DNA from: Saccharolobus solfataricus P2 | Lineage (GTDB): Archaea > Thermoproteota > Thermoprotei_A > Sulfolobales > Sulfolobaceae | Assembly (NCBI RefSeq): GCF_000007005.1 | Contig: NC_002754.1 | DNA length: 64,000 bases | Strand: one strand, 5' to 3' | Part shown: in pieces, positions 57,427 to 57,606 of the stretch | Layout of the letters: the number at the start of each line of letters is the position of its first letter | Numbering within the stretch: position 1 is the stretch's first letter | Position numbers and translations under genes: made by a program | The notes under the pieces: generated by a model | What the model saw: only the letters and a program-made list of their open reading frames with translations | Told to the model about the DNA's origin: nothing | Database searches by the model: none

Positions 57427-57606
57427 CCTATATAGGTTTTATTAGCCAGGGAGAGTAATACTCCTCAGCTGGGAGTATGGTCGAGCCTTTGACTGAAGCG
57501 AAGTCTTCGGTAAGAGGCGTGACAACCCCTACAGTCGGACTGAACATTGTGAAAATATTCACGAATATAGGTGTGACACAAGGGTAGGGGTAATTGGAAT
57601 AGACGT
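57427..57606 (+). mobile_element. ISC1229-like IS110 left end with complete candidate bridge RNA
   Basis: Homologous to 2311-2495; cut at GIDV by ISC1359. Confidence 0.85.

What the first reader, a model, noticed from the sequence alone, without database searches (positions are those of the whole stretch)
57427..57575. Natural reprogramming: target guides differ between three ISC1229-like copies, donor loop is fixed
Seen: the scaffold GAAG..TCTTCG..CGTGAC is conserved, but the right guide is GCGAGGG (2400), TCTAGGG (28253) or TAAGAGG (57511), always ending in GG, the core complement. The left guide is GGAAAT, GGTAAC or TTTGAC. The donor loop is identical at 2429-2461 and 57539-57571. In the 28167 copy the left guide GGTAAC equals its own left flank GGTAA-C. 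The 57427 copy does not match its flank, which may be rearranged. Inference: variation confined to guide positions means the family retargets itself within one genome.
Basis: partly seen in the sequence, partly recalled or inferred. Interest (0 to 1): 0.85.

Follow-up and report, generated by a model that had tools for sequence, protein, structure and literature searches.

The report
ISC1229 bridge-RNA genes with varied target guides
Three broken copies of an archaeal jumping gene (ISC1229, IS110 family) each keep the gene for a guide RNA whose part that recognises the element's own ends is fixed while its address part differs. This is a new archaeal example of the RNA-guided recombination already described in bacteria.

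Summary
The three sites are left ends of ISC1229-type IS110 elements in Saccharolobus solfataricus P2, and all three copies are defective.

Each left end encodes a bridge RNA: a 5' hairpin, a target-binding loop (TBL) and a donor-binding loop (DBL).
- **Donor side:** the DBL strands match the element's own ends (ACTGAAC in the right end; CC+TATAT in the left end).
- **Core:** two empty paralogous sites in the window fix the shared core as CC.
- **Copy 1:** the right guide pairs 7/7 with its right flank.
- **Copy 2:** the left guide pairs with 5 nt of flank plus the core.
- **Mismatches:** the left guides of copies 1 and 3 do not match their flanks.
- **Untestable:** the right flanks of copies 2 and 3 are lost.

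Across relatives, variation sits in 8+5 guide columns (1.58 versus 0.24 bits). Guides covary with flanks (no permutation of 20,000 reached the observed match).

"Confined to guides" holds for copy 1 against a second full S. solfataricus copy (7 of 27 differences fall in 13 guide positions). It fails for copy 3, whose first ~110 nt is a diverged module on a ~99% identical backbone.

Many elements sit at sites that match another allele's guides. This suggests guide cassettes are exchanged or act in trans.

This is a new member of a known kind, of moderate interest.

The parts
57427..57606 (+). Copy 3: left core copy CC (57427-57428) plus the left-end remnant of an ISC1229-type element, holding a complete bridge-RNA gene and the first 5 recombinase codons
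   Evidence: BLAST to an intact element, IS positions 5-186. The same sequence continues uninterrupted into the recombinase gene in another strain's assembly, L140.
57444..57470 (+). Copy 3: 5' stem-loop of the bridge RNA
   Evidence: RNAfold. This helix has compensatory changes in the family alignment at columns 22/50 and 23/49.
57485..57494 (+). Copy 3: left target guide GCCTTTGA (variable) plus the core-pairing CU
   Evidence: Falls in the hypervariable columns 70-77 of alignment A2. Scores only 3/8 against its own flank ACGAGAGAA|CC.
57495..57509 (+). Copy 3: invariant inner hairpin of the target-binding loop (GAAGCGAAGTCTTCG)
   Evidence: Invariant stem in 32/32 sequences. Part of that invariance comes from the search pattern, but it also holds in the protein-ascertained loci.
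57511..57519 (+). Copy 3: right target guide TAAGA (variable) + GG (core complement) + CG (handshake positions)
   Evidence: Columns 97-105 of A2. The predicted target CC|TCTTA cannot be checked because no right end survives.
57526..57590 (+). Copy 3: donor-binding loop. Stem 57526-57532/57584-57590; left donor guide ACTGAAC 57539-57545; inner hairpin 57549-57562; right donor guide ATATAGG 57565-57571.
   Evidence: The guides match the family's right end (..ACTGAACG|CC) and left end (CC|TATAT..). Nearly invariant in the family.
57607..58965 (+). DDE-type IS (375-aa transposase, PF01609) inserted into copy 3. ISC1229 sequence does not resume after it in this window.
   Evidence: Terminal inverted repeats at 57607-57623 and 58949-58965. 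ORF; Pfam. In other strains ISC1229 resumes at IS position 270.
2311..3069 (+). Copy 1, first part: core CC, bridge-RNA gene (left guide 2374-2383, right guide 2400-2406, donor loop 2416-2480) and the N-terminal part of the recombinase gene
   Evidence: 99.3% identical to the intact orthologous copy L125.
3070..4118 (+). IS630-like element inserted in copy 1's recombinase gene, with GT duplicated on both sides
   Evidence: Inverted repeats at 3070-3080 and 4108-4118; a second copy lies at 10479-11535. Removing it restores a 317-aa reading frame.
4121..4577 (+). Copy 1, second part: C-terminal part of the recombinase gene, right end (left donor ACTGAACG 4568-4575) and right core copy CC (4576-4577)
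   Evidence: 100% identical to L125. The right flank CC|CTCGC is the reverse complement of the right guide GCGAGGG.
28167..28272 (+). Copy 2: core CC, 5' hairpin and target-binding loop only (left guide 28227-28236, right guide 28253-28259). It is cut inside the donor-loop stem.
   Evidence: BLAST IS positions 1-110; alignment A1. The same structure is present in three other strains.
28273..28325 (+). Left-end fragment of a second IS110-type element (ISC1190-like), inserted at ..AAGCC|CC of copy 2
   Evidence: 29/29 identical, and about 50 nt near-identical, to the left end of the full element at 21717 on the minus strand.
36251..36266 (+). Empty paralogous target site TTTCATAA|CC|CTCGCA in a 330-bp inverted-repeat element (36078-36407)
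   Evidence: Aligns with both flanks of copy 1. This fixes the core as a single CC.
7023..7038 (-). Second empty paralogous target site (same 16-mer)

Best explanation
Positions 57427-57606, 2311 onward and 28167-28272 are the left ends of three defective ISC1229-type IS110 insertion sequences. Each left end encodes a bridge RNA of about 150-165 nt with three parts: a 5' hairpin, a target-binding loop and a donor-binding loop.

The donor loop is fixed because it must pair with the element's own joined ends. Its 5' strand ACUGAAC(A)UU reads like the right end ACTGAACG|CC. Its 3' strand AUAUAGG is the complement of CC|TATAT at the left end.

The target loop holds an 8-nt left guide followed by CU or UU, and a 5-nt right guide followed by GG. 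The left guide reads like the left flank plus the CC core, so it pairs with the bottom strand. The right guide is the reverse complement of CC plus the right flank, so it pairs with the top strand.

The DEDD/Ser recombinase encoded just downstream would use this RNA to insert the circularised element at the addressed CC (CT is tolerated). This step is inferred by homology with IS621.

Within the family the 13 guide positions change freely while the scaffold and donor loop stay constant, so different copies carry different addresses.

The way addresses change, or come to disagree with where a copy sits, appears to be exchange of short patches or of the whole 5' module between copies, and/or use of a co-resident copy's RNA in trans. 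This last step is inferred, not shown.
For: Boundaries and core: two empty paralogous sites (..CATAA CC CTCGCA..) compared with the occupied site (..CGTAA CC [IS] CC CTCGCA..). A further empty site for another allele is in L060.

Donor loop versus own ends.

Structure: 95.7% of cells are paired, against 44-51% when partners are slid. Compensatory changes occur in three helices. RNAalifold recovers both loops. RNAfold z-scores are -4.8 and -4.2.

Variation: guide columns carry 1.58 bits versus 0.24 elsewhere in 9 sequences not selected by the scaffold pattern (Mann-Whitney P=5e-12). The 32-sequence set gives the same picture.

Covariation with flanks:
- Genome-derived loci: 7/18 left guides score >=7/8 and 6/12 right guides score 5/5. 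None of 20,000 permutations reached either the observed mean match or the observed count of such matches.
- Wider set: P=1e-4 for right guides; for left guides none of 20,000 permutations reached the observed mean.
- A single-base example: right guide GGTAGTGG with flank CCACTAC, and GGTATTGG with flank CCAATAC, at paralogous sites.

Window copies: copy 1's right guide scores 5/5 plus the core. Copy 2's left guide gives 5 contiguous matches plus the core; only 1.7% of all guide-by-site pairs reach 5.

Copy 1 versus the other full S. solfataricus copy (L126): 27 differences in 1216 nt, 7 of them in the 13 guide positions (Fisher P=1.8e-9).

Protein: PF01548 + PF02371. PDB hits are the IS621 transposase (E=3e-11) and the ISCro4 transposase. 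GIDVS, IEPTG, KTDxxDA and SKRG align with the ISCro4 chain.

Patch exchange:
- The same locus in another strain (L125) differs at only 5 of 1216 nt. Three are adjacent right-guide bases and two more lie within the next 45 nt.
- Copy 3 has 28 differences in its first 120 columns, then 9 in about 870.

Sites that match another allele:
- Copy 1's left flank fits L126's left guide 7/8.
- L131 and L132 (same S. islandicus genome, different guides) both sit at GCCCCCTTAA|CC, which fits a third allele 8/8.
- L149 and L150 have identical bridge-RNA regions and encode the identical recombinase protein. One is at a matching site. The other is at a site I judged by eye to fit yet another allele (left guide 7/8, right guide 4/5).
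Against: - No transcript, circle junction or activity data exist for this element.
- All three window copies are dead, so their present guides may not be the ones that placed them.
- Two of three left guides do not match their flanks. The intact orthologue L125 carries a right guide that does not match (2/5).
- In copy 3 the two guide strands can pair with each other and close the loop.
- In 7 of 13 independent matched site families the left-guide match ends 1-2 nt before the core. The IS621 model does not predict this.
- Part of the scaffold invariance, and of the guide/flank mixing in the metagenome loci, may be artefact. The search pattern fixed the scaffold, and about 95 nt of conserved sequence between flank and guide allows chimeric assembly.
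- Rfam 15 has no model that reaches this RNA.
Confidence: 0.85

Rival explanations
1. The guide differences among the three window copies were not made in this genome. They are pre-existing alleles of separately arriving or recombining lineages, so the window shows allele assortment rather than an element retargeting itself.
For: Copy 3's whole 5' module is diverged, with indels in the 5' hairpin and linker, and resembles S. islandicus-type left ends (GGGAGTATGGTCG). Its donor loop onward is about 99% like copy 1.

The same guide alleles recur in other species and in hot-spring metagenomes. For example, the CCCTTTGA left guide occurs in Acidianus (L147), and GGGAAA-type left guides are widespread.

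Left and right guides occur in many combinations.
Against: Copy 1 and L126 are 98.4% identical outside the loop yet differ at 7 of 13 guide positions. The orthologous locus in L125 changed three adjacent right-guide bases between strains of one species. Change within S. solfataricus is therefore real, whatever its source.
Confidence: 0.4
2. The differences are neutral decay of dead relics and have no bearing on targeting.
For: All three copies are interrupted or truncated. Two left guides do not match their flanks. Copy 3 has a 1-nt deletion after the loop and self-pairing guides.
Against: Decay would spread evenly. Instead, scaffold and donor-loop columns are invariant while guide columns approach 2 bits, including among intact elements. 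Guides also covary with flanks.
Confidence: 0.05
3. The conserved block is conserved because it encodes a 38-residue N-terminal extension of the recombinase, not because it is an RNA.
For: An ATG inside the loop's closing stem (CATGGTC) opens a frame that runs into the recombinase in 27 of 32 distinct left ends. Database proteins are annotated from it at 355-357 aa. No other ATG, GTG or TTG lies in frame before GIDVS.
Against: - Invariance covers all three codon positions.
- Helices show compensatory changes.
- The strands match the element's ends and flanks.
- The frame is broken in 5 of 32: window copy 3, which is a defective relic, and four left ends from other loci (L003, L015, L079, L105).

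Dual use of the sequence, as RNA and as coding, remains possible.
Confidence: 0.05

Closest known systems
IS621 / IS110-group bridge RNA systems (Durrant et al. 2024, PMC11208160; Hiraizumi et al. 2024, PMC11208158)
   Same: - The RNA is encoded in the left end, upstream of a DEDD/Ser recombinase.
- It has a 5' hairpin plus two internal loops.
- The 5' strand of each loop reads like the top strand (pairs with the bottom strand). The 3' strand is the complement of core plus right arm.
- A 2-nt core is shared by donor and target.
- The two bases after the core complement in the target loop (CG) can pair with donor positions 6-7 (CG), like the handshake guides.
- Natural variation is concentrated in the target loop and covaries with insertion sites.
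- The targets are repeated elements.
   Different: - Archaeal (Sulfolobales) host.
- The core is CC (CT accepted), read by CU/UU and GG, so partly by wobble.
- The right guide is 5+2 nt.
- The left-guide match can end 0, 1 or 2 nt before the core.
- The RNA overlaps an open frame that continues into the recombinase.
- Only about 46 bits of similarity to the IS621 protein.
- No experimental data.
Half-match recombination and top-strand insertion in IS110 elements (preprints 10.64898/2026.08.31.748434 and 10.1101/2025.10.25.684509)
   Same: Several genome copies match on one side only: copy 1 and L131 on the right side, L127 on the left side. Left junctions sometimes keep a CT core (4 of 53) while right junctions are CC (17 of 18). 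Copying of the top-strand product would give this pattern.
   Different: Those results are from IS621 and a Caloranaerobacter element, in vitro and in E. coli. Here there is only the pattern left in genomes, which guide replacement after insertion would also produce.
IS1111-group elements with seekRNA
   Same: Same recombinase superfamily and the same RNA-guided logic.
   Different: In IS1111 the RNA lies downstream of the gene in a long right end. Here the right end is about 91 nt and the RNA is in the left end.
ISC1229 as catalogued for S. solfataricus P2 (ISfinder; Cbp1 study PMC10883916)
   Same: Same element. A cluster protein 96% identical to the query is named 'Second ORF in transposon ISC1229'. 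P2 is reported to hold one intact copy and many partial ones.
   Different: The Cbp1 paper treats ISC1229 as an ordinary IS110 member and does not mention a guide RNA. The boundaries derived here give 1214-1216 bp rather than 1229-1233 bp, so the catalogued '3' flank' probably includes the host repeat.

Membership tests
IS110-group bridge-RNA insertion sequence | Recombinase with an N-terminal DEDD RuvC-like domain and a C-terminal Tnp domain with catalytic Ser | tested here: met
   PF01548 + PF02371 on the 100%-identical protein P0001. PDB hits are IS621 (8wt6, E=3e-11) and ISCro4 (9t56). GIDVS, IEPTG, KTDxxDA and SKRG align with the ISCro4 chain.
IS110-group bridge-RNA insertion sequence | Structured non-coding RNA in the left end with two internal loops flanked by stems | tested here: met
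   RNAalifold consensus. The named structure is 95.7% paired, against 44-51% in slid controls, with 5 pairs changed on both sides. Single-sequence folds have z-scores of -4.8 and -4.2.
IS110-group bridge-RNA insertion sequence | Donor loop strands complementary to the element's own right end (bottom strand) and left end (top strand), including the core | tested here: met
   ACTGAAC occurs at 2429-2435 and in the right end at 4568-4574. ATATAGG is the reverse complement of CCTATAT at the left end. The same holds in all relatives read.
IS110-group bridge-RNA insertion sequence | Target loop strands complementary to the insertion site and covarying with it | tested here: met
   Family level: (P=1e-4 for right guides in the wider set; in the other tests no permutation of 20,000 reached the observed match). 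In the window: copy 1's right guide 7/7, copy 2's left guide 5+2, the left guides of copies 1 and 3 not matching, and two right flanks unavailable.
IS110-group bridge-RNA insertion sequence | Short core shared by donor and target, present once in the empty site and on both sides after insertion; no other duplication | tested here: met
   Empty sites at 36251-36266 and 7023-7038 compared with the occupied copy 1. A further empty site is in L060.
IS110-group bridge-RNA insertion sequence | Handshake positions next to the core complement pair with the other DNA after strand exchange | tested here: inconclusive
   In the target loop, CG after GG can pair with donor positions 6-7 (CG) and is invariant. 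In the donor loop, UG after GG fits the left-target positions only at some sites (for example CA at site B).
IS110-group bridge-RNA insertion sequence | The RNA is expressed, typically from a promoter completed at the circle junction, and is required for recombination | not testable with these tools
   Only a lead. The conserved right end carries CGAAAGATTTATTA (BRE/TATA-like) about 26 nt upstream of the 5' hairpin in the joined form. No transcript or activity data were available.
IS110-group bridge-RNA insertion sequence | Match to a curated RNA family model | tested here: not met
   No Rfam 15 family matches at gathering score. With E up to 10 there are only chance hits, best E=0.46. This says nothing against the structure. 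No Rfam 15 model reaches this RNA.
IS1111-group (seekRNA) element | Guide RNA downstream of the recombinase gene in a long right end, with a short left end | tested here: not met
   The right end is about 91 nt (4485-4575). The left end is about 170 nt and holds the RNA.
ISC1229 | Near-identity to the catalogued S. solfataricus element | tested here: met
   P0013, 'Second ORF in transposon ISC1229 [S. solfataricus P2]', is 96% identical. The window is colinear with P2 AE006641.1 near 1.607 Mb (L135).

The most novel reading that the evidence does not exclude
The family works as a pool of interchangeable addresses. All alleles share the same ends and donor loop, so any co-resident bridge RNA could insert any copy's circle. 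The 5' module, or either guide, could also be swapped between copies across the invariant 15-nt hairpin. An element's location would then often be written by a different RNA from the one it carries.

In addition, the left-guide match may sit 0, 1 or 2 nt from the core, and left junctions keep the target's CT core while right junctions keep the donor's CC. These patterns would mean that insertion in these archaeal elements is driven by the top strand and right guide, with a loosely positioned left guide.
Probability: 0.3. Interest if true: 0.65.

Novelty: new member of a known kind. Interest (0 to 1): 0.45.

Why it matters
It places a Sulfolobales insertion sequence, long catalogued as an ordinary IS110 member, among the RNA-guided bridge recombinases. 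It also gives the exact guide positions, core and donor arms. That offers a thermophilic, archaeal version of a genome-writing tool with about 16 natural left-guide variants to test.

It explains why ISC1229 copies cluster in particular repeats.

The mismatches between an element's own guides and its site, and the variable spacing of the left guide, bear on open questions about IS110 mechanism: half-match insertion, single-strand insertion and action in trans. These can be tested in laboratory Sulfolobus or E. coli strains.

Tried and rejected
1. I first took GACTGCATGAGAACACTCCC (8 hits) for the right end. It is the terminal repeat of a 330-bp inverted-repeat host element. The true right end is ..TTACTGAACG at 4566-4575.

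2. The weak scaffold hit at 52521 lies in an ORF-like stretch and is chance. 'CCTATATGGGTT' at 29791 follows a CCCCCTTAA|CC site that is used by relatives, but it is too short to call.

3. The genome-contig scan with the protein gave only 4 loci. Exact-protein look-ups gave one or two places each, and all 12 are used.

4. I tried to recover the right flanks of copies 2 and 3 from other strains. Copy 2 is identical everywhere. Copy 3 continues to IS position 705 or 990 in other strains, but no right end was reached.

5. I considered that the left-guide register shifts come from misplacing the boundary. This is rejected for site B, because an empty site shows GAGGGAAACA|CC|ACTACC.

6. I considered a 4-nt staggered cut to explain the shift. 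The predicted alternative junction (..GAACG CACC ACTAC) was not seen, and the idea remains untested.

7. Guide/flank mixtures in metagenome contigs are not used as proof of exchange, because about 95 nt of conserved sequence between flank and guide permits chimeric assembly. The argument rests on complete genomes.

8. No covariance model was built. BLAST and pattern searches already gave an unambiguous census of the window.

Full report
**1. What is at the coordinates**

The guide strings are exactly as quoted. Positions 2429-2461 and 57539-57571 are identical.

BLAST with an intact relative finds exactly three left ends of this element in the window:
- 2311-3069, continuing at 4119-4577;
- 28167-28273;
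- 57429-57606.

The window is colinear with Saccharolobus solfataricus P2 (AE006641.1 near 1.607 Mb, L135). The joined recombinase is 100% identical over its 317 residues to a 355-aa protein annotated in S. solfataricus. It is 96% identical to a protein named 'Second ORF in transposon ISC1229'.

All three copies are defective:
- Copy 1 carries a 1049-bp IS630-like insert at 3070-4118, with a GT duplication. Removing it restores a 317-aa frame.
- Copy 3 is cut at 57606 by a DDE-type IS (57607-58965).
- Copy 2 ends at 28272 because the left end of a different IS110-type element sits in its donor-loop stem.

**2. Boundaries, core and donor arms**

Copy 1 lies in one arm of a repeated inverted-repeat element. 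Two unoccupied paralogues (36251-36266, and 7023-7038 on the minus strand) read ..TTTCATAA CC CTCGCA... The occupied site reads ..TCTCGTAA CC [TATATATAGG ... TTACTGAACG] CC CTCGCACA...

The element therefore runs from TATATA.. to ..GAACG. It shares a CC core with its target and makes no other duplication. It is 1214-1216 bp long.

I used the geometry published for IS621 (PMC11208160). In that model the 5' strand of each loop pairs with the bottom strand, so it reads like the top strand. The 3' strand pairs with the top strand.

Applied here, the second loop fits the element's own ends:
- its 5' strand GGACTGAACATT reads like the right end TTACTGAACG|CC;
- its 3' strand AATATAGG is the complement of CC|TATAT(A).

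In the first loop, copy 1's 3' strand GCGAGGG is the exact complement of CC|CTCGC, the core plus right flank. The CG that follows the GG could pair with donor positions 6-7 (CG), as the handshake guides of IS621 do (PMC11208158).

**3. Structure**

I aligned 32 distinct left ends from the window, isolate genomes, MAGs and hot-spring metagenomes (A2). RNAalifold recovers the two loops, each with its closing stem and inner hairpin.

For the structure I named (5' hairpin, two loop stems, two inner hairpins), 95.7% of cells form standard pairs. When partners are slid, the figure is 44-51%. Five pairs change on both sides. Single sequences fold with z-scores of -4.8 (copy 3) and -4.2 (copy 1). No Rfam 15 model reaches this RNA.

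**4. Where the family varies, and whether guides track flanks**

In A2 the eight columns before the invariant CU and the five columns before the invariant GG carry 1.2-1.9 bits each. The loop stems, the inner hairpin, the handshake CG and the donor-loop strands carry about 0.

The metagenome loci were found with a pattern that fixes part of the scaffold. I therefore repeated the test on nine sequences found through the protein or present in the window. Guide columns carry 1.58 bits against 0.24 for all others (P=5e-12).

Genome-derived loci only:
- 7 of 18 left guides match their own left flank at >=7 of 8 positions.
- 6 of 12 right guides match at 5 of 5.
- None of 20,000 permutations of flanks among elements reached either the observed mean match or the observed count of such matches.

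The wider set gives P=1e-4 for right guides (16 pairs). For left guides (44 pairs) no permutation of 20,000 reached the observed mean.

A clean single-base case comes from paralogous sites that differ at one base. Right guide GGTAGTGG sits at CCACTAC, and GGTATTGG sits at CCAATAC.

**5. The three window copies one by one**

Copy 1:
- The right guide scores 5/5 plus the core.
- The left guide ATGGGAAA|UU scores only 3/8 against TCTCGTAA|CC.

Copy 2:
- The left guide AAAGGTAA|CU against GGTGGGTAA|CC gives five contiguous matches next to the core, plus the core itself.
- Among all 646 guide-by-site pairs only 1.7% reach five, and those are essentially the cognate pairs.
- Its right flank is gone.

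Copy 3 (the finding's coordinates):
- The left guide GCCTTTGA|CU scores 3/8 against ACGAGAGAA|CC.
- Its right flank is not recoverable. In other strains the copy continues to IS position 705 or 990, but no right end was reached.
- Its left flank is identical in four S. solfataricus genomes and several read assemblies, so I see no sign of rearrangement on that side.
- Its two guides can pair with each other and close the loop in the minimum-energy fold.

**6. How the guides differ between copies**

(a) Copy 1 versus the other full S. solfataricus copy (L126). There are 27 differences in 1216 nt. Seven fall in the 13 guide positions, plus one in the core-pairing base and one in the hairpin loop. 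The background elsewhere is about 1.6% (Fisher P=1.8e-9).

(b) The same locus in another strain (L125, intact). It differs from window copy 1 at only five positions. Three are adjacent right-guide bases (GCGAGGG becomes GCACAGG). Two more lie 19 and 44 nt downstream. There are none in the remaining ~1150 nt. The window's version matches the flank and L125's does not (2/5). This looks like a short replaced patch, or very local change after insertion.

(c) Copy 3 (full length from L140) versus copy 1. There are 28 differences, with indels, in the first 120 columns, which cover the ~110-nt left-end module (left-end start, 5' hairpin, linker, target loop). Then there are 9 in about 870. This is a mosaic whose breakpoint lies between the two loops. 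For copy 3, variation is not confined to guides.

(d) Elements often sit at sites that fit another allele.
- Copy 1's left flank fits L126's left guide CCTCGTAA 7/8.
- L131 and L132 are two different alleles in one S. islandicus genome. Both sit at GCCCCCTTAA|CC, which fits a third allele's left guide 8/8. By eye, that allele's right guide also fits L132's right flank.
- L149 and L150 in Sulfurisphaera ohwakuensis have identical bridge-RNA regions and encode the identical recombinase protein. L149's right flank scores 5/5. L150 fits neither of its own guides, but by eye it fits the GAAGGGAA / GTGAG allele seen in S. shibatae, at 7/8 and 4/5.

Three explanations fit these mismatches:
- replacement of guides after insertion by recombination between copies;
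- insertion directed in trans by a co-resident copy's RNA, which is possible because ends and donor loop are shared;
- one-sided 'half-match' insertion as described for IS621 (preprint 10.64898/2026.08.31.748434).

I cannot separate them with the data in hand. Left and right guides also occur in many combinations. Most of that evidence is from metagenome contigs, where chimeric assembly is possible, so I do not lean on it.

**7. Two departures from the IS621 picture**

First, the left-guide match ends at different distances from the core:
- at the core in about six site families (for example TAGTATTT|CC, TTTTACTC|CC, and GGTAA|CC in copy 2);
- 1 nt before it in four (L126, L127, L130, L070);
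- 2 nt before it in three. These include the most used site, GAGGGAAAC-A|CC, whose empty form I found.

C-runs at some sites (L147 versus L070) show that register can slip.

Second, the left junction keeps CT at 4 of 53 loci, while the right junction is CC at 17 of 18. The left guide's CU pairs perfectly with CT and by wobble with CC. The right guide's GG does the reverse. Both observations would follow if the product copied from the exchanged top strand is what survives, as a 2025 preprint proposes for another IS110 element (10.1101/2025.10.25.684509). This is inference only.

**8. Comparison with what is known, and novelty**

The anatomy meets the sequence-testable defining features of the IS110-group bridge-RNA systems: recombinase domains, an RNA in the left end with two loops, donor-loop and target-loop complementarity, and a shared core. 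The handshake positions gave an inconclusive result. The element is not of the IS1111 type. Expression and activity could not be tested.

Variation in the target loop that covaries with insertion sites is how bridge RNAs were found (PMC11208160). NCBI already names some of these proteins 'IS110 family RNA-guided transposase'. The principle is therefore not new.

In the searchable literature I found no description of the ISC1229 RNA. 'ISC1229' returns four papers, and the Cbp1 study, the only one I read, does not mention a guide RNA. 'Bridge RNA' plus Sulfolobus returns two papers; the one I read mentions Sulfolobus only as the source of a Nop5 structure.

I file it as a new member of a known kind. 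Its secondary points of interest are module exchange, sites that fit other alleles, variable left-guide spacing, and overlap with the recombinase reading frame.

**9. Caveats**

- There are no expression or activity data.
- The window copies are relics.
- The number of independent site families is modest.
- Part of the family set is metagenomic and was ascertained by pattern.
- The direction of the change between the window and L125 is inferred from which version matches the flank.

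Noticed in passing
window 20540-21727 (minus strand) and 28273-28325: A second IS110-type element of about 1.19 kb (ISC1190-like; recombinase 38% identical to the ISC1229 recombinase) has its own left-end RNA-like region. The putative donor-loop strands match its ends: ACCGGAAG occurs in both the loop and the right end, and AUAAGG is the complement of CCTTAT at the left end. A roughly 50-nt fragment of its left end is inserted at a CC|CC inside ISC1229 copy 2's donor-loop stem.
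   Followed up: partly
window 2366-2479 and equivalents in relatives: An ATG in the loop's closing stem (CATGGTC) opens a frame that runs through both loops into the recombinase in 27 of 32 distinct left ends. No other ATG, GTG or TTG lies in frame before GIDVS. The guide bases may therefore also encode residues of a 38-aa N-terminal extension (..TEHCDKIHEYRCD..).
   Followed up: partly
relatives L001, L015, L022, L070, L126, L127, L130, L147, L148: The left-guide match ends 1 or 2 nt before the CC core in 7 of 13 independent matched site families. It ends at the core in the others. This is unexplained.
   Followed up: partly
window 36078-36407; terminal-repeat hits at 332, 4703, 7192, 29766, 36078(-), 36388, 38881, 50871: A 330-bp element with inverted ends (GGGAGTGTTCTCA..GACTGCATGAGAACACTCCC) and partial copies of it are scattered through the window. 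One arm is the target of ISC1229 copy 1. It may be what the literature calls the '3' flank of ISC1229', where Cbp1 binds (PMC10883916).
   Followed up: partly
window 4496-4520 and the right ends of relatives: A conserved hairpin lies in the right end just after the recombinase stop codon. It reads CACGCGGA..TCCGCGTG here and CACGTGGG..CCCACGTG in relatives, so both arms change together. Downstream is a conserved CGAAAGATTTATTA that looks like an archaeal BRE/TATA pointing across the circle junction.
   Followed up: no
L008, L103 versus L060; L059: Some metagenome contigs join the left flank of one target site to the right flank of another site about 70 bp away in the same repeat. This is what recombination between two nearby copies would leave. 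L030 has a right end followed directly by CC TATATAGGTTTT, a left-end-like 12-mer.
   Followed up: no
window 57607-58965, 22133-23496, 1100-2021: There are three copies or part-copies of a 1.36-kb DDE-type IS (375-aa transposase, PF01609). In other strains the one in copy 3 is followed by ISC1229 position 270, so 83 bp are missing there. In P2 the rest of ISC1229 is lost altogether.
   Followed up: partly
window 26603-26665 (minus strand): Rfam match to Sulfolobus sRNA133 (RF02814, 56.5 bits against a gathering score of 44).
   Followed up: no
window 37233-37673: Three tandem copies of a 147-nt unit, at 100%, 93% and 84% identity to the first copy.
   Followed up: no
L016, L106 and L148 (first left end): In three relatives the donor loop is interrupted right after the right donor guide ATATAGG by the same sequence (CATTACATGCCATGCCTCTAACAAGCCTA..). 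This suggests another element that targets this spot.
   Followed up: no
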